DNA of 30,632 nt from Octopus sinensis. Taxonomy: Eukaryota. Made by a program: the position numbers and the translations under genes. Within the stretch, counting starts at the first letter, position 1; the number at the start of each line of letters is the position of its first letter. Below are positions 8,873 through 28,780 of this stretch, in pieces. The stretch covers positions 1-30,632 of the forward strand of contig NW_021823633.1 in assembly GCF_006345805.1 (NCBI RefSeq). The letters are read 5' to 3'. The notes beneath the pieces are model-generated. The model was not told where the DNA came from. It did not search any database and saw only the letters and a list, made by a program, of their open reading frames with translations.

Positions 8873-8978
8873 TTTTTATCGATCCGGAAATCAAAGTCGA
8901 CCTCAGCGGAATTTGAGCTCAGAAAATAACAATGGACGAGATGTCGGCGTGTGCTGAAGATTCTTCCAGCTTACCGCC

Positions 8979-8980
<2 letters not shown>
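8873..8980 (-). mobile_element. SINE type 2, diverged 5' part
   Basis: aaagtcgacctcagcggaatttgagctcagaa...gattcttccagcttaccgcc is reverse-complement similar to the 20045 copy. Confidence 0.75.
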
Positions 8981-9037
<57 letters not shown>

Positions 9038-9039
<2 letters not shown>

Positions 9040-10285
9040 ACTGACCAAAATAGATAGGAAAACAAGAAAAATAATGACAGGATCTAGGATGCATCACCCA
9101 AAATCTGACATAGAAAGACTATATATACAACGTATAGAAGGTGGTAGAGGCCTTATACAGCTGGAAAACTACTATAAAATAACCACCATAGGACTGCAAA
9201 AATATCTACTTCAGAAGGAAGGAAAACTGATCCAGATAGCGGCAAAACACGAGCAAAACAAAAAACTGTTCTCAGTATTTAAGGAAGCTGACAAATACAA
9301 ACAAGAATCATACCACCTAATAAACATGAAGAAGAAGAAGAAGATGAAGAAACAACAAAAGCTATAAAACAAATGAAATCCAAACTAAAAATAGAACAGC
9401 AACGAACCATGATAAAACGATGGCAAGAAAAGCCCCTTCATGGTAAATACTGCACTAAACTAAACGCAAAAGAAATAGACAAAGAAAAATCCCAGCAATG
9501 GTTGAAAAGCTCAGGACTCAAAGCAGAAACAGATGGATTTTTAATTGCAGCACAAGACCAAAGCCTCCCCACCAGAAATTACCAAAAACATGTAATGAAA
9601 AGAAATATTACAAGTAACTGCAGAATATGTGGAGATGGACAAGAAACAATAAATCATATTATCTCTAGCTGCCCAGTCCTGGCTAAGAAGGAATATATTC
9701 ACAGACATGACAGAGTTGGAACCTACATACATTGGAAGCTATGCCAACATTATGGAATAACAACAGAAAAAAGATGGTATAGGCACACACCAGAAAAGGT
9801 CACAGAAAACGAGAAAGCAACCATACTCTGGGATATGCCGATACACACAGATAGAGAAATTAAGGCCAACAGACCAGATATAGTTGTCAGCGACCATGAA
9901 GAAAAAAAATGCTTTCTAATTGATGTATCAATACCGGCTGATGACAACGTGTCTCTAAAAGAAATGGAGAAACTCTCAAAATACAAAGACCTGGAAATAG
10001 AGGTAACTAGAATGTGGAATCTGAAAACAGAAACAATTCATATCATAGTAGGTGCATTAGGCATGATAAAAAAATATTCAGACAAATACATAACAAAAAC
10101 ACCAGGACTTACAAACACATATAACATACAGAAAATCGCACTACTAGGCACTGCACACATCCTACGCAGAACACTTTCCTTACAATAACCATCAGAGCAT
10201 CACAACAAATCACAGCACATACCCAAGGCACACAGAGCTGCGCTCGGTAGTGAAGTGAAAGCACGCTATAAAAATAAAACTACTG
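9038..10285 (+). mobile_element. 5'-truncated non-LTR retrotransposon with restriction-like endonuclease (R4/Dong-like): RT C-terminus, CCHC knuckle, RLE, 3' UTR
   Basis: Motifs ERLYIQRIEGGRGLIQLE, ETDGFLIAAQDQSLPTRNY, CRICGDGQETINHIISSC, YIHRHDRVG and RPDIVV..LIDVSIP..EKLSKYKDL. One apparent 1-nt deletion near 9305 splits ORFs 8951-9367 and 9373-10188. (AAT)n lies on both sides. Confidence 0.9.
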
Positions 10286-11877: not shown

Positions 11878-11979
11878 GGAGTAAACACATAAATGTGAAA
11901 CAAGGTGAAAAAAAGAGTACTCAAATACCAGTGGTAGAGTAATATGCTTATATTTAAGCAGCAGAAAATTCAACAAAAT

Positions 11980-12015
11980 CTGTTACTCTGTTTCTCGTTG
12001 CCGTTCATCAGACAG
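11980..12015 (-). ncRNA. Minimal type-I hammerhead ribozyme (mirror copy, 2-nt deletion in stem III)
   Basis: Minus strand reads CUGU-CUGAUGA-ACGGCAACGA-GAAAC-AGA-GUA^ACAG. Confidence 0.65.
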
Positions 12016-12323
12016 TTTTTGCTAGAATGGAACTGATATATCAATTCAATCTATACTCTTACAAACGCTACACCTTTAAAAAGAAATGGACTTGTTTGAT
12101 TGGCCCTTTAGAAAAAACGGTCAATCTTCGAGCGATAAACAAAAAGGTATAAGTTTTATAAGTTTTTATATATATATACATATATCTTTGACCTTTTTGT
12201 TTATCGCTCGAAGATTGACCGTTTTTTCTAAAGGGCCAATCAAACAAGTCCATTTCTTTTTAAAGGTGTAGCGTTTGTAAGAGTATAGATTGAATTGATA
12301 TATCAGTTCCATTCTAGCAAAAA

Positions 12324-12361
12324 CTGTCTGATGAACGGCAACGAGAAACTCAGAGTAACAG
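12324..12361 (+). ncRNA. Minimal type-I hammerhead ribozyme
   Basis: CUGU-CUGAUGA-ACG(GCAA)CGA-GAAAC-UCAGA-GUA^ACAG. Stem I extends to ~10 bp (GCAAAAACUGU/ACAGAUUUUGU). Stem II has a GNRA loop but an A.A mismatch at its base. Confidence 0.75.
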
Positions 12362-12599
12362 ATTTTGTTGAATTTTCTGCTGCTTAAAATACAGTATAAT
12401 ATATATATATATGTATGTATAACACTTATACGTGGATATGCTGTATAAATATTTGGATATATGTGTGAATATATATATATATATATGTGTGTGTGTATAT
12501 ATACAGAGAGAGAGGAGAGAGAGAGAGAGAGTAAGAGAGAGACACAGAGACAGAGAGAGAGACGCAAGCATGGTTTTATGATTAAGAAGGTCAATTTTT

Positions 12600-19232: not shown

Positions 19233-20044
19233 GATGGGCTGTCATAAGAAAGCAGAAGTAAAGTCGTGAACAACTGTAAGCTACTGACCAGTAAACCTGT
19301 GGAGCGCATTCGGATCGGGAGCATTCGGGCCAGAATGAGCTCCGTAATAGGCAACCAAAATGCAGGGACCGATGGTGCTTTACAGAGTGCTGGTCTGTAA
19401 ATGTGTAGCAGTGTGAACTTTGCTAAATGTACTCAAAAAGCCAAGAGATGATGTTAAGCCTACTACAAACTATGTCTACGATTCAAGAATTCAGGATGCA
19501 AGGATGGGAATAAATACCAGAAGGTAACCAGTCAGGTAGTCTACCAATTCTAGTATTCCCTCATTCTGCGACTGGTACTTTATTTATCGAACATCGTCCC
19601 CTACGGTGGGAGGTAAGGAACGACTGAGTTACGTGCGATTCATCGGAAGAAATAGGGCAAGCTTCCTTTGTTTTGTGTGACGTCCAGCCGCACCTATCTC
19701 TGACAATCCTGCCATTCCCACTCCCTGCTACTTTTTTATCAACGTCGAAAGGGAAGAGTGCAAAGGGAACCTCAGTAGGAATTGAACTCATTATGAAGGG
19801 AACCGTAAGAAGTACAGCTCGGTACCACGTCGGCGGCGGCGGTGTTAACAGAAAGACAACCAAACACGCGTATATATTCATTTGCAGACAAGGACACCGA
19901 CAAGAACATACTTCTGCTAGCAGAGACGGAGCTCGATTCCAAATCGGTGGATTCCAAGCGGTAATTCTTTGGGTAAATAAAAAGGAAGTTCAAAAGTCTT
20001 GGAATGGAGGAAAAGAGGGAGACCTTGGGCGGTAGTGAAGATGG

Positions 20045-20272
20045 GGCGAGCTGGCAGAATCGTTAGCACGCTGGGCAAAATGCGTAGCCGTATTTCGTCT
20101 GCCGTTACGTTGTGAGTTCAAATTCCGCCGAGGTCGACTTTGCCTTTCATCCTTTCGGGGTCGATAAATAAAGTACCAGTTACGCACTGGGGTCGATGTA
20201 ATTGACTTAATCCCTTTGTCTGTCCTTGTTTGTCCCCTCTATGTTTAGCCCCTTGTGGGTAGTAAAGAAATA
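20045..20272 (+). mobile_element. tRNA-derived SINE type 2, full length, with a 14-bp target-site duplication
   Basis: A-box-like TGGCAGAATCGT and B-box GAGTTCAAATTCC. ggtagtgaagatgg is repeated at 20031-20044 and 20273-20286. Confidence 0.92.
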
Positions 20273-20307
20273 GGTAGTGAAGATGGAAAAGGAGAGGAGA
20301 AAGTGAA

Positions 20308-21689: not shown

Positions 21690-22072
21690 CGACTGCAATC
21701 TATTGTTTTATGGCGGATCTATATATGACCCTGTAATCTGGATAGAGTAACGGCAGATTTTTCAATAGTTCAGGATAGGTATTCTCTGATCTTCAGCTGT
21801 ATGTTAACATCTGCAAGGCAGCTAATTTCCACAAATATGCACAGTTTCTCTTCTCTATCCCAAATTATCACATCAGGTCTGTTGTGCTTACATTTTATTG
21901 AGGTCTTCACTGGTATATTCCACCAGTATTCCTTTTATTATGAGTGGCTATATCTTCTACCATATTTTAGAATTTTATTTATTTCTCCTCGGGGTTATCC
22001 TTCCGACGATTTTCCTATAGAGTGTCCCGGTTACAACTCATGTCACATAGGTCGATAATACCTTGATATCTT
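21690..22072 (-). pseudogene. Decayed RLE-type LINE fragment (third family)
   Basis: With stops and frameshifts, the minus strand gives SRYYRPM*HE.. and KEYWWNIPVKTSIKCKHNRPDVIIWDREEKLCIFVEISCLADVNIQLKIRE..ENTYPELLKNLPLLYPDY (RPD..E..K RLE signature). Confidence 0.8.
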
Positions 22073-25141: not shown

Positions 25142-25255
25142 CAAAAAGGCAACAAAACTGGGAACAGCAACGACATTAACAACCATAATATCAACAACGA
25201 TGGCAAGAACAAAGAACACAAAAAAGAAATTTTAAGAGGTGGTCATGGTACGAAC

Positions 25256-25445
25256 CTGAAAGATGGAGGTACTCTGGAACCAAACTTTGTAGAATTCCAA
25301 ATATGGTCATGTAAACCATCTATATTGCTATAGAACTCCAAAAGGTTGCTGCCAACTGACCGCAACGATCTGTTATATTCGTGGACACAAATCTTGAAAT
25401 ATTCCATTCCGAGTTTATGCATTAACTCGTTGAAAGTCCAACAAC
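25256..25445 (-). CDS. Internal coding exon (190 nt) of the same soluble guanylate cyclase subunit; H-NOX core
   Basis: Acceptor T-run-cttgtggacatatttccAG|GT and donor ttcAG|GTtcgt. Translation (G)CWTFNELMHKLGMEYFKICVHEYNRSLRSVGSNLLEFYSNIDGLHDHIWNSTKFGSRVPPSF(R) aligns by eye with sGC beta1 [52 protein letters not shown]. Subunit type (alpha vs beta) is not resolved. Confidence 0.92.
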
Positions 25446-25485
25446 CTGGAAATATGTCCACAAGAAAAAAAAAAAAGGTTAGAGC
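25446..25485 (-). promoter_or_regulatory. Branch point (CTCTAAC), polypyrimidine tract and 3' splice site of the H-NOX exon
   Basis: Minus strand reads gcTCTAAcc-T-run-cttgtggacatatttccAG. The putative branch A at 25479 is 33 nt from the AG. Confidence 0.7.
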
Positions 25486-26290
25486 ATAATAGATATTTGA
25501 TTTTTAGTTTTGCCACAAAGCTTGCAGTTTTGAGGGGAGAGAGCAGTCGGTTACATGCCCTTCCCAACCCCCAGTCAGCAATTGGAAGATTTCGGCTGAA
25601 ATTGAACTCGGAACGTAAAACGTCAAAAGAAAGAAAAAAAAGGTTAGTGCATAATAGATATTTGATTTTTAGTTTTGCCACAAAGCTTGCAGTTTTGAGG
25701 GGAGAGAGAAGTCGGTTACATGCCCCTCTCAACCCCCAGTCAGCAATTGGAAGATTTCGGCTGAAATTGAACTCGGAACGTAAAACGTCAAAAGAAAAAA
25801 GAAAAAGGTTAGTGCATAATAGATATTTGATTTTTAGTTTTGGCTCAAGGATTGCAGTTTTGAGGGGAGAGAGAAGTCGGTTACATGCCCCTCTCAACCC
25901 CCAGTCAGCAATTGGAAGATTTCGGCTGAAATTGAACTCGGAACGTAAAACGTCAAAAGAAAAAAAAAAAGGTTAGAGCAGAATAGATATTTGATTTTTA
26001 GTTTTGGCTCAAGGCTTGCAGTTTTGAGGGGAGGGGGAAATCGGTTACATGCTCCTCCCCACCCCCAGTGAGCAAATGGTAGATTTCGGCTGAGATTGAA
26101 CTCGGAACGTAAAACGTCAAAAGAAAAAAAAAAGGTTAGTGCATAATAGATATTTGATTTTTAGTTTTGGCTCAAGGCTTGCAGTTCTGAGGGAAGGGGG
26201 AAATCGGTTACATGCTCCTCCCCACCCCCAGTGAGCAAATGGTAGATTTCGGCAGAAATTGAACTCGGAACGTAAAACGTCAAAAGAAAT
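25462..26290 (-). repeat. Tandem array of 5 x ~165-bp units derived from a SINE 3' part plus intron-end sequence
   Basis: The marker ggttag recurs at 25477, 25642, 25807, 25971 and 26134 (periods 165, 165, 164, 163). Each unit contains gttccgagttcaatttc (SINE B-box region) on the minus strand. A SINE head lies at about 26290-26338. Confidence 0.95.
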
Positions 26291-26358
26291 TCGGCTGACC
26301 AGTTAGGCCGAGACGATAACGGTTCTGCCAGTTCGCTATTTTAAGGATAATAACGATG

Positions 26359-26565
26359 AGCCTTTCTACTATGGGCCATATGGGGGAGAGGGGGATGAGT
26401 CGATTACATCGACCCCCCAGTGTTATACTGGCACTTATTTTATCAACCCCGAAAGGATGAAAGGCAAAGTAGACTTCGACAGAATTTGAACTCAGAACAT
26501 AGCGGCAGACGAAATGCCGGTAGGCATTTCGCCCGGCGTGTTAACGACCCTGCCAGCTTGTCACC
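26359..26565 (-). mobile_element. SINE type 2, full length
   Basis: gtcgattacatcgacccccagtg...ccccgaaaggatgaaaggcaaagtagac...gaatttgaactcagaac...gcatttcgcccggcgtgttaacgaccctgccagc. Confidence 0.9.
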
Positions 26566-26574
26566 TTAATAATA

Positions 26575-26810
<236 letters not shown>

Positions 26811-26842
26811 TTCAAATTTTTGGCAGAATGGCAGCATGGAGG

Positions 26843-27013
26843 AGGGGATTAAGTCGATTACATCGACCCCAGTGCATAACTGGTACATATTTAATCGACC
26901 TCAAAAAGGATGAAAGGCAAAGTCGAACTTGGTGGAATTCGAACTCAGAAGGTAGAGAGTCGGGTGAATTTACTCTACAGCGAATTTATTTTCTAACGCT
27001 CTAACGATTTCGC
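26843..27013 (-). mobile_element. SINE type 2, diverged
   Basis: ggattaagtcgattacatcgaccccagtgc...aaggatgaaaggcaaagtcgaac...ggaattcgaactcagaa. Confidence 0.85.
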
Positions 27014-27084
27014 TCATACAACGTCCTTGCCAGAGGGAAGACGGCGATTTGTCACCGGAACGCAATCACATCAACAACAATAGT

Positions 27085-27152
27085 AATATCATCATCATCA
27101 CCAACATAATCATCATCATCATCATCATCATAATCATAATCACGACCACCAC

Positions 27153-27188
<36 letters not shown>

Positions 27189-27424
27189 CATCATTCTCAT
27201 CATTACCATCATCATTATCATCATCATCATCATCATCACATCATCATCATCATCACCATCATCATCATCCTCATCATCACCACCATCATCATCATCATCC
27301 TCATCATCACCACCATCATATCATCATCATCATCATCATCATCCTCATCATCACCACCATCATCATCATCCTCATCATCACCACCATCATCACCATCCTC
27401 ATCATCACCACCATCATCATCATC

Positions 27425-27456
<32 letters not shown>

Positions 27457-27621
27457 ATCATCATCATCATCATCCTCATCATTCTCATCATTACCATCAT
27501 CATTATCATCATCATCATCATCATCATTATCATCATCATCAATCATCATCATCATCATCATCATCACCATCATCATCATCCTCATCATCACCACCATCAT
27601 CACCATCCTCATCATCACCAC

Positions 27622-27654
<33 letters not shown>

Positions 27655-27706
27655 AATCACGATCACCACCAACACCATCATCATCATCATCACCATCATT
27701 ATCATC

Positions 27707-27759
<53 letters not shown>

Positions 27760-27811
27760 CATCATTCTCATCATTACCATCATCATTATCATCATCATCA
27801 TCATCATCATT

Positions 27812-27848
<37 letters not shown>

Positions 27849-27903
27849 CCATCATCATCATCCTCATCATCACCACCATCATCACCATCCTCATCATCAC
27901 CAC

Positions 27904-27945
<42 letters not shown>

Positions 27946-27997
27946 AATCACGATCACCACCAACACCATCATCATCATCATCACCATCATTATCATC

Positions 27998-28065
<68 letters not shown>

Positions 28066-28540
28066 AATCACCATCACCACCAACACCAACACCATCATCA
28101 TCATCATCACCATCATTATCATCATCACCATCACCTTCACCATCATGTTCGTCTTGATCATCTTCATCATGATCATGATGATAATGATGATGATCATCAT
28201 CATCATCCTCATCTCCCTCCTCCTCCTCCTCATCATCATCATCAGGTTCACCATCATGACGATGATGAAGATGATCATCATCACAATCGTCATCGTCATC
28301 ATCGTCATCATTATCATCAGCATCAACAACAATAATAATAACAACAACAACAACAACAACAAAAACAACGACATCAACAACAACAAGATAACAACAACCC
28401 ACAATGTCCTGCAACTATTATTACTACCACCACCACCACCACCACCACCACCACCACCACCACAGCAACAAGAACAACAACAGCAACAACAACAAAAACA
28501 AGACAATGACAACAATGGCAAGAACAACAACAGCTAAAAT
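27085..28540. repeat. ~1.2-kb (CAT)n-based tract with a ~285-bp higher-order period, followed by CAA/CCA tracts
   Basis: The marker cctcatcattctcatcattacc occurs at 27186, 27474 and 27757. Confidence 0.92.
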
Positions 28541-28658
28541 TATAACAACAACAATAGCAGCAACAACATGTACAACATCGTGAAAAGCATTAACTGCAAC
28601 ATGAACAGCAGCAAATGTTTGAGTTTTATGGATGAAAAGAGGGCCGGGTTGTTTTTAC

Positions 28659-28780
28659 CTGAAAGTCTGGCAGTGGCGGACACTATCTTCACAACCAAGT
28701 CATCATCATAATCTAGATAACGTGTCTCGTGATCATGTGACGAGAGATCGAACTTCTCCCAATCAATCGCCAATTCATCT
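28659..28780 (-). CDS. Internal coding exon (122 nt) of a soluble guanylate cyclase subunit; N-terminal part of the H-NOX domain
   Basis: Minus-strand acceptor ttttttctttgtctttgcAG|A and donor tcaG|GTaaaa. Translation DELAIDWEKFDLSSHDHETRYLDYDDDLVVKIVSATARLS(G) resembles sGC beta1 [20 protein letters not shown]. Starts phase 2 and ends phase 1, which matches the start phase of the 25445-25256 exon. Confidence 0.85.

What the first reader, a model, noticed from the sequence alone, without database searches (positions are those of the whole stretch)
25446..26338. SINE-derived tandem array has quintuplicated the branch point and polypyrimidine tract of an sGC exon
Seen: on the gene (minus) strand each ~165-bp unit ends in CTAAC plus a T-rich run, and the last unit's T-run is the real polypyrimidine tract. 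Units 2, 3 and 5 carry CACTAAC, closer to consensus than the real site CTCTAAC. The upstream units are followed by candidate acceptors (ttccgAG; aatttcAG, e.g. at 25596). Use of 25596 with read-through would add 150 nt in frame but with a TAA at 25506-25504, giving a likely NMD target. The array starts from a SINE head (26338-26290) and rejoins at a tttctt microhomology. Inference: a copy-number-variable set of decoy 3' splice signals that could tune productive splicing of an NO-receptor gene.
Basis: partly seen in the sequence, partly recalled or inferred. Interest (0 to 1): 0.72.

Follow-up and report, generated by a model that had tools for sequence, protein, structure and literature searches.

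The report
Intronic SINE repeat duplicating splice signals
A piece of a mobile element and the splice signals beside it were copied five times in a row just upstream of a guanylate cyclase exon; the structure is real, but it is a known kind of repeat and nothing here shows that it regulates splicing.

Summary
On the minus strand there are five ~165-bp units (25462-26283; 95% alike). They begin behind a SINE head (26340-26290) and end 16 nt before the acceptor (AG 25447-25446) of a 190-nt H-NOX exon. Each unit ends in CTAAC plus a 15-17-nt pyrimidine run. The four distal copies are each followed by ccgAG and t(t/c)tcAG. Every decoy use gives a premature stop, including the predicted +150 nt with TAA at 25506-25504. 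The gene is a molluscan-type soluble guanylate cyclase alpha-2-like subunit, so it is the partner subunit, not the haem-binding beta subunit. The architecture (full SINE head, head-truncated repeats, complete last tail) is already described for intronic SINE arrays in bivalves. The intron is 93% repeats. Mosaic units indicate growth by unequal crossing-over. The decoy CAG is a derived change that spread with the units. The functional claim, a copy-number-variable tuner of splicing, could not be tested. No transcript, orthologous locus or second individual was reachable. The array shows no sign of selection for or against the decoys, though the test has no power. Most likely it is a tolerated intronic minisatellite that makes at most low-level NMD-bound transcripts.

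The parts
28659..28780 (-). Exon A (122 nt) of the sGC alpha-2-like gene, encoding DELAIDWEKF...ATARLS. Acceptor ttgcag| (AG 28782-28781); donor CAG|GTAAAA (intron starts at 28658).
   Evidence: Sequence. Joined to exon B it gives a Pfam HNOB match, E 4.7e-12. The PDB alignment to the sGC beta-1 H-NOX domain runs across the junction.
25446..28658 (-). Phase-1 intron of 3213 nt. 79% is tandem repeats, and 93% is repeats once three SINE copies are counted.
26290..26340 (-). tRNA-like head of the founder SINE (GCGAACTGGCAGAACCGTTATCG...), present once, upstream of the array.
   Evidence: Aligns with the heads of SINE copies at 26575-26365(-), 20045-20273(+) and 27010-26830(-). ARAGORN and Rfam do not call it a tRNA.
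25462..26283 (-). Five tandem units, cut after TTTCTT: u1 26283-26121 (163 nt), u2 26120-25957 (164), u3 25956-25792 (165), u4 25791-25627 (165), u5 25626-25462 (165). Each holds the SINE B-box region, the core, an A-rich tail, CTAAC and a pyrimidine run.
   Evidence: TRF, alignment A2, distance matrix, pyrimidine-run coordinates.
26284..26289 (-). TTTCTT microhomology at the upstream breakpoint. The same hexamer at 25467-25462 closes the last unit.
   Evidence: Read.
25478..25482 (-). Proximal CTAAC (within CTCTAAC), branch A at 25479, 33 nt from the real AG with no AG in between. This is the presumed real branch point.
   Evidence: Exon A's acceptor has the same layout: CTTAAC at 28816-28811, 31 nt from its AG.
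25462..25476 (-). T12CTT run, the presumed real polypyrimidine tract.
25643..25647 (-). Decoy CTAAC of u4 (CACTAAC). The equivalents are at 25812-25808 (u3, CACTAAC), 25976-25972 (u2, CTCTAAC) and 26139-26135 (u1, CACTAAC).
25596..25597 (-). Decoy acceptor aatttcAG nearest the exon. The equivalents have their G at 25761, 25926 and 26090. A weaker ccgAG lies 11 nt upstream of each (G at 25607, 25772, 25937, 26101).
   Evidence: The A of CAG is derived: u1 and the other SINE copies have T or C there.
25504..25506 (-). In-frame TAA, reached if acceptor 25596 is used with read-through.
25549..25554 (-). 5' splice-site-like CAT|GTAACC, 41 nt after the decoy CAG and repeated in every unit (GT at 25554, 25719, 25884, 26048, 26211). 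It matches 6 of 9 consensus positions and would define a 41-nt frame-shifting mini-exon.
25256..25445 (-). Exon B (190 nt) encoding (G)CWTFNELMHKLGMEYFKICVHEYNRSLRSVGSNLLEFYSNIDGLHDHIWNSTKFGSRVPPSF(R). Acceptor ttccag|G; donor CAG|GTTCGT.
   Evidence: Homologues match up to ...PSFR, and their next residue C is missing from the window.
26365..26575 (-). Second SINE copy in the same orientation, 22 nt upstream of the founder.

Best explanation
This is a tolerated intronic minisatellite of SINE origin.

DNA level. A tRNA-derived SINE sits in sense orientation just upstream of the 3' end of a short intron in a soluble guanylate cyclase alpha-2-like gene. A first duplication between two TTTCTT hexamers copied the SINE from just before its B box to its A-rich tail. 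It also copied the ~45 nt that follow, which hold CTAAC and the T-run. Later rounds of register-shifted (unequal) exchange between the 165-bp units raised the number to five and left mosaic units. The tandem array, the breakpoint hexamers and the mosaic pattern are shown; the order of events is inferred.

RNA level. The proximal CTAAC and T-run, with the first AG after them, form the working 3' splice site. This site gives the only open frame, it matches the homologues' exon boundary, and it lies within exon-definition range (190 nt) of the donor. The four distal copies are cryptic 3' splice-site modules. If used they can only join to their own ccgAG/tcAG, and every such product carries a premature stop. 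I infer that they are used rarely, if at all, and that their products are removed by nonsense-mediated decay. On this view the array has little or no regulatory role.
For: Array and unit structure. SINE homology of the head and body. [quoted passage not shown] SINE-derived satellites are also known in squamates (PMC10702118). The intron is 93% repeats and the window has 76 TRF rows, so repeat growth is the local norm. Unit distances fall into two subgroups (u1-u2 6; u3-u4 4; u4-u5 4; between subgroups 13-17 of 155). The mosaics are u2 and u4: u2 carries the u3-5 state at column 36 but the u1 state elsewhere, and u4 shares a derived state with u3 at column 69 and with u5 at columns 114/118/120. 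Up to 11% divergence between units shows the array is old and tolerated. Only the 25445 exon start gives an open frame. Homologous proteins and ORFs start at or align to that boundary. There is no AG between the proximal branch point and the real AG, whereas AGs follow every distal branch point. No unusual RNA structure (z = +0.57) and no protein family in the array ORFs.
Against: By simple measures the decoy tcAG sites are about as good as the real site. They have the same pyrimidine fraction (0.62), equal or longer U-runs, and a CACTAAC that pairs with U2 one base better than the real CTCTAAC. They are also transcribed first. The decoy CAG was created by a derived T-to-A change and then kept in all four copies. 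None of the four decoys has lost CTAAC or its AG despite up to 11% divergence. I expect about one such hit by chance, so this is not significant. Exon B's own donor (GTTCGT) is not strong. 'Mostly unused' is therefore an inference and has not been shown.
Confidence: 0.65

Rival explanations
1. The four distal modules are functional decoy 3' splice sites, or 41-nt decoy exons. They capture U2AF, SF1 and U2 and either divert a share of transcripts to NMD or hold the intron unspliced. Unit number, which varies between individuals, would then set the output of the cyclase subunit.
For: The decoys look competent: CACTAAC, 15-17-nt pyrimidine runs, and a CAG 46-48 nt downstream. All products carry premature stops. 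Each unit also has a 5'ss-like CAT|GTAACC 41 nt after the CAG, so it has the two-sided layout required by the decoy-exon model (PMC6097662 and PMC7373989). The CAG is derived and retained. Mosaic units imply ongoing unequal exchange, which is the usual source of copy-number variation.
Against: There is no expression, lariat or population data. The decoy AGs are followed by C or T rather than G, and a poor GAG intervenes before each CAG. The 5'ss-like site lacks G at -1 and +5. Only the nearest decoy would give an exon under ~350 nt. The signal positions show no excess conservation. The surrounding intron and window are full of similar neutral repeat growth. A regulatory role is not needed to explain anything seen.
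Confidence: 0.12
2. The repeated U-runs and the CU-rich stretches (CTTCTCTCTCCCCTC in u3-u5) act as a multivalent platform for pyrimidine-tract binding repressors of the PTB or hnRNP C type. These would dampen use of the real acceptor and cause exon B skipping (190 nt, frame-shifting) or intron retention, rather than acting as decoy acceptors.
For: Five 15-17-nt pyrimidine runs and three CU-rich blocks lie within 830 nt of the acceptor. hnRNP C competes with U2AF65 on long U-tracts of SINE origin in humans (PMC3629564). Exon B skipping would shift the frame.
Against: This is pure motif reasoning. Binding preferences of the cephalopod or molluscan proteins were not examined, and there are no data on exon skipping. 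The same repressors would equally serve simply to silence the decoys, which is the ordinary outcome under the best explanation.
Confidence: 0.07
3. A rival on origin only. CTAAC and the T-run are the SINE's own 3' end, so the exon's present branch point and polypyrimidine tract were donated by the SINE (exaptation) and not copied from the native intron.
For: The 3' 65 nt of the unit do not align well with the other SINE copies in the automatic alignment, so the SINE's end is not fixed. No significant target-site duplication brackets the element.
Against: The complete SINE at 20045-20273 ends in an A-rich GTAGTAAAGAAATA directly before its perfect 14-nt TSD. The founder has a matching CTTTGTGGCAAAACTAAAAATCAAATA just before TATTATGC-CTAAC, which puts the SINE end near 25492. 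A weak TSD candidate (TATTATCCT 26352-26344 / TATTATGCT 25491-25483) fits that end. From general knowledge, sense-strand SINE tails are A-rich or simple repeats, not T12 runs. Exon A's native acceptor has the same branch-point-to-AG layout.
Confidence: 0.25
4. Assembly artefact: a single unit was wrongly expanded, or a longer array was collapsed.
For: Tandem repeats of this size are error-prone in short-read assemblies. The true copy number in the sequenced individual cannot be verified here.
Against: The five units differ from one another at 4-17 positions in a structured gradient, and their T-runs differ in length. An artefactual expansion would not produce this.
Confidence: 0.03

Closest known systems
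Intronic tandem-like SINE arrays of the TSD1-(SINE)n-TSD1 type in bivalves (PMC11481361, Fig. 5E text)
   Same: [quoted passage not shown] The array lies within an intron of a mollusc and is in direct orientation.
   Different: Here the repeated unit seems to extend past the SINE tail into the intron's branch point and pyrimidine tract. The array abuts a coding exon, 16 nt from the AG. Flanking TSDs could not be shown.
SINE-derived satellites of squamate reptiles (PMC10702118)
   Same: Tandem repeats built from a portion of a SINE, arising independently at a locus.
   Different: Those amplify to many copies and associate with subtelomeric regions. This one is a five-copy, single-locus, genic array.
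Decoy exons that promote intron retention (SF3B1 and OGT type; PMC6097662, PMC7373989)
   Same: Intronic, non-productive splice-site pairs that could engage the intron's terminal sites. Inclusion products carry premature stops.
   Different: Known decoy exons are single, often conserved, and shown to work by reporters and antisense block. Here there are four recent repeat copies with a weak 5'ss-like site and no functional data.
Cryptic 3' splice sites from SINE U-tracts held in check by hnRNP C (antisense Alu; PMC3629564, PMC5115870)
   Same: A SINE-associated long U-tract followed by AGs inside an intron is a latent 3' splice site, and its products are NMD targets.
   Different: In Alu the U-tract is the antisense poly(A) tail. 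Here the SINE is in sense orientation and the T-run is probably native intron. Whether the repressor system exists in this lineage was not examined.

Membership tests
tRNA-derived SINE | 5' tRNA-related head with internal Pol III box A and box B | tested here: inconclusive
   The head aligns with three other copies in the window. It has a box-B-like GAGTTCAA(A/T)TTC and a box-A-like CTGGCAGAA(T/C)CG. ARAGORN finds no tRNA and Rfam gives no match. Reading these as boxes A and B rests on my knowledge of the consensus.
tRNA-derived SINE | Dispersed copies with target-site duplications | tested here: met
   Four related copies are in the window. The copy at 20045-20273 has a perfect 14-nt TSD, GGTAGTGAAGATGG. 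The founder itself has only a weak TSD candidate that is not significant.
SINE-derived tandem array, (SINE)n type | Complete head once, then head-truncated units sharing one junction, with a complete last tail | tested here: met
   The head at 26340-26290 occurs once. All five units start at the same TTTCTT|TTGACG junction, and the last unit runs into unique sequence. This matches the description in PMC11481361.
Minisatellite / VNTR | Unit number varies among individuals | not testable with these tools
   Only one haplotype is available. Mosaic units show past unequal exchange, not present polymorphism.
Decoy splice sites / decoy exon | Splice-site-like sequences on both sides of a short intronic segment | tested here: met
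   A branch point, pyrimidine run and CAG are followed 41 nt later by CAT|GTAACC in each unit. This is sequence resemblance only, and the 5' side is weak.
Decoy splice sites / decoy exon | Demonstrated engagement by the spliceosome, with an effect on intron removal or mRNA level | not testable with these tools
   No RNA data for this locus could be reached.
Soluble guanylate cyclase alpha subunit | N-terminal H-NOX-like (HNOB) domain | tested here: met
   Pfam HNOB E 4.7e-12, 46.6 bits against a cut-off of 25.5. Best named relatives are molluscan alpha-2-like subunits at 50-57% identity over exon B.
Soluble guanylate cyclase alpha subunit | HNOBA and catalytic cyclase domains in the same gene | tested here: not met
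   No further exon is found in the 25 kb downstream. The window simply ends before them, so this says nothing against membership. The Octopus bimaculoides model A0A0L8IHS4 has HNOBA and cyclase domains but lacks HNOB, and it starts exactly at the next exon. That fits but does not prove that the two belong together.

The most novel reading that the evidence does not exclude
The array is a copy-number-variable bank of working decoy 3' splice sites, or 41-nt decoy exons. It sets how much productive mRNA of an sGC alpha-2-like subunit is made. The derived CAG would then have spread through the array because it was favoured.
Probability: 0.1. Interest if true: 0.6.

Novelty: new member of a known kind. 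Interest (0 to 1): 0.3.

Why it matters
If the decoys were used, this would be a natural case in which a minisatellite changes gene dosage through splicing. Its unit count is a simple variable that could be typed across individuals, in a gene of the NO/cGMP pathway. As it stands, it is a clean example of two known things. One is how a SINE can seed a tandem array inside an intron. The other is how such growth can multiply splice signals next to an exon without destroying the gene. It also flags a probable annotation gap, since the H-NOX exons are missing from a public octopus gene model.

Tried and rejected
1. Orthologous or paralogous DNA. Exact-pattern scans for a 26-nt invariant stretch of the unit and for the general SINE core found nothing in metagenome, prokaryotic-genome or viral collections. 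Those collections appear to hold no DNA of this animal group.

2. Transcripts or proteins containing exon B. The 63-aa peptide and a 10-sequence alignment both gave no usable hit in the word-indexed search. In one search I set the E-value limit too tight, which wasted a search. The exhaustive representative search found only relatives of 57% identity or less.

3. Exact look-ups of the window ORFs over exon B and over the array, and of the octopus model P0073. None is on record.

4. More exons of the gene in the window. None were found.

5. tRNA or Rfam recognition of the SINE head. No match.

6. RNA structure hiding the decoys or exposing the real site. None beyond shuffled controls.

7. Coding potential of the long ORFs across the array, which exist because 165 = 55 codons. 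There are no domains, so I rejected this.

8. Independent repeated SINE insertions as the origin of the array. Rejected because all units share one truncation point and junction and lack the head.

9. Distal branch points serving the real acceptor. Rejected because AGs intervene.

10. A quantitative splice-site model (MaxEnt type) was not available offline. I used descriptive measures only.

Full report
**What is there**

Tandem Repeats Finder reports one long-period array in the window: 25466-26289, period 165, 5.0 copies, 95% matches, no indels, score 1385. Read on the minus strand, the array starts behind a short tRNA-like SINE head. It stops 16 nt before an AG (25447-25446) that opens an open reading frame. 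The five units align without internal gaps, and 141 of 167 columns are invariant.

**The gene**

Two coding exons lie on the minus strand.
- Exon A is 28780-28659. Its acceptor is ttgcag| and its donor is CAG|GTAAAA.
- Exon B is 25445-25256. Its acceptor is ttccag|G and its donor is CAG|GTTCGT.

Joined across a phase-1 intron of 3213 nt, they encode 104 residues that match Pfam HNOB (E 4.7e-12, above the curated cut-off). They also match the H-NOX domain of sGC beta-1 structures, with the alignment running straight across the exon junction.

An exhaustive HMMER search of 1.84 billion representatives gave best matches of 50-57% identity. The named ones are molluscan 'guanylate cyclase soluble subunit alpha-2-like' proteins from chiton, Bulinus, Dreissena and Tegillarca. 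The exon therefore belongs to an alpha-type subunit of the NO-sensitive heterodimer, not to the haem-binding beta subunit.

No further exon of the gene lies in the 25 kb downstream. The only cephalopod relative retrieved is the Octopus bimaculoides model A0A0L8IHS4. It lacks the HNOB domain, and its conserved part begins at '...RCATEDGKLIVHLY', the exon that should follow '...PPSFR' of exon B. This explains why exon B had no near-identical hit. It also suggests the window holds N-terminal exons missing from that model. I believe the SINE family is octopod, but that rests on memory and was not tested.

All of them hold.
- CTAAC plus a 15-17-nt pyrimidine run closes each unit.
- Counted from the exon, units 2, 3 and 5 read CACTAAC, and units 1 and 4 read CTCTAAC. 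By the standard U2 pairing scheme, CACUAAC forms one more pair than CUCUAAC (established knowledge).
- After each distal CTAAC the first AG is ccgAG, 35-37 nt from the branch A. The second is t(t/c)tcAG at 46-48 nt.
- The real AG is 33 nt from the proximal branch A, with no AG between them.
- Using 25596 with read-through adds 150 nt in frame and meets TAA at 25506-25504. Every other decoy use also meets a stop.
- TTTCTT precedes the first unit (26289-26284) and closes the last (25467-25462).

**Origin of the unit**

The founder (26340-26121) matches other SINE copies in the window (E 2e-8 to the copy at 20045-20273). That copy is complete and carries a perfect 14-nt target-site duplication. 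The repeated unit starts just before the B-box-like GAGTTCAAT and runs through the SINE core and an A-rich tail.

The complete copy ends in ...CCTTGTGGGTAGTAAAGAAATA. The unit has ...CTTTGTGGCAAAACTAAAAATCAAATA at the corresponding place. After that come TATTATGC, CTAAC and the T-run. A weak TSD candidate (TATTATCCT at 26352-26344, TATTATGCT at 25491-25483) fits a SINE end near 25492, but about one such match is expected by chance.

My reading is that CTAAC and the T-run are the native end of the intron, copied along with the SINE. This is inference, and I put it at about 3 to 1. Exon A's native acceptor has the same layout: CTTAAC 31 nt from its AG.

**How the array grew**

Pairwise differences split the units into (u1, u2) and (u3, u4, u5). 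There are 4-8 differences within groups and 13-17 of 155 between them. Two units are mosaics.
- u2 carries the u3-5 state at column 36 but the u1 state elsewhere.
- u4 shares a derived state with u3 at column 69 and with u5 at columns 114/118/120.

This is the signature of register-shifted exchange between units. I therefore infer a first duplication at the 6-nt microhomology, followed by unequal crossing-over. Up to 11% divergence means the array is not recent.

The same architecture is described for intronic SINE arrays in the blood clam: a complete head once, head-truncated repeats, and a complete last tail (PMC11481361). SINE-derived tandem repeats are also known in squamates (PMC10702118). 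The intron is 79% tandem repeats and 93% repeats once SINEs are counted. The window as a whole has 76 TRF rows. Repeat growth is the local norm.

**Do the decoys matter?**

Arguments that they could:
- By simple measures the tcAG decoys equal the real site. The pyrimidine fraction is 0.62 in both, the U-runs are equal or longer, and three of the four have the better branch-point match.
- They are transcribed first.
- The decoy CAG is derived. u1 and the other SINE copies have T or C where u2-u5 have A, and the A was kept as the units multiplied.
- Each unit also has CAT|GTAACC 41 nt after the CAG. That gives a two-sided 'mini-exon' layout that would shift the frame, reminiscent of decoy exons (PMC6097662, PMC7373989).

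Arguments against:
- The base after each decoy AG is C or T rather than G.
- A poor GAG comes before each CAG.
- The 5'ss-like site lacks G at -1 and +5.
- Only the nearest decoy would give an exon of ordinary size (340 nt).
- Long U-tracts of SINE origin are typically kept silent by hnRNP C-type binding in the one system where this was studied (PMC3629564).

Within the array, signal positions vary about as often as the rest: 1 of 9 signal columns against 21 of 155 overall. With five units this test has no power. RNA folding shows nothing special (z = +0.57).

One point of logic can be settled. Because AGs follow every distal branch point, the distal copies cannot act as spare branch points for the real acceptor. 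They can only be decoys.

**What could not be done**

No transcript, orthologous locus or second haplotype was reachable.
- DNA pattern scans found nothing.
- Exact ORF look-ups found nothing.
- Homology searches returned only distant relatives.

Use of the decoys, copy-number variation and any effect on expression therefore remain untested.

**Verdict**

The structural interpretation is right, with two refinements: the subunit is alpha-like, and the splice signals are probably native rather than SINE-borne. The regulatory interpretation is an untested possibility, and I rate it at about 10%.

The most likely account is a tolerated SINE-seeded minisatellite that happens to have multiplied a 3' splice-site module. 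It would yield at most low-level transcripts bound for NMD. It is a new member of a known kind, of modest interest.

Noticed in passing
window 11953-12388: Near-perfect palindrome: arms 11990-12159 / 12180-12349 (170 nt, 98% complementary) extended by 11953-11990 / 12351-12388 (38 nt, 100%), with a 20-nt spacer. It first showed up as two mirror-image ORFs. It could be a foldback or MITE-like element, or an assembly artefact.
   Followed up: partly
window 27088-28568: About 1.5 kb of trinucleotide repeat fills the upstream half of the same intron: (ATC)n with 413 copies, then (CAA)n, which read as GAT and TTG on the gene strand. Overall the 3213-nt intron is 93% tandem repeats and SINEs, so the ancestral intron was probably only a few hundred nt long.
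   Followed up: partly
window 20031-20287: Complete 229-bp SINE (20045-20273, + strand) with a perfect 14-nt target-site duplication, GGTAGTGAAGATGG. This suggests a recent insertion, and it is useful as the reference copy for this family.
   Followed up: yes
window 8951-10188 (+) and 21770-21910 (-): Fragments of a non-LTR retrotransposon ORF2 C-terminus. ORF 9373-10188 matches Pfam zf-RVT (E 4.4e-6), and a shorter ORF at 21770-21910 has a similar ...NRPD(V/I)...D(V/I)S... motif. A (TAA)19 run precedes the first fragment.
   Followed up: partly
window 25256-25445 and 28659-28780, versus P0073: The public Octopus bimaculoides protein A0A0L8IHS4 (545 aa) lacks the HNOB domain and starts, after a spurious N-terminus, at the exon that should follow exon B. 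The window's two exons may be the unannotated N-terminal exons of that gene or its orthologue.
   Followed up: partly
window 25250-25258 and 1-25255: Exon B's donor is the non-consensus CAG|GTTCGT, and the next exon is more than 25 kb away. A weak donor facing a very long intron makes exon definition at this exon less robust than usual.
   Followed up: no
window 25549-25557 and the equivalent position in each unit: Every unit carries CAT|GTAACC 41 nt after the decoy CAG. The unit therefore mimics a whole mini-exon with both splice sites, not only a 3' splice site.
   Followed up: partly
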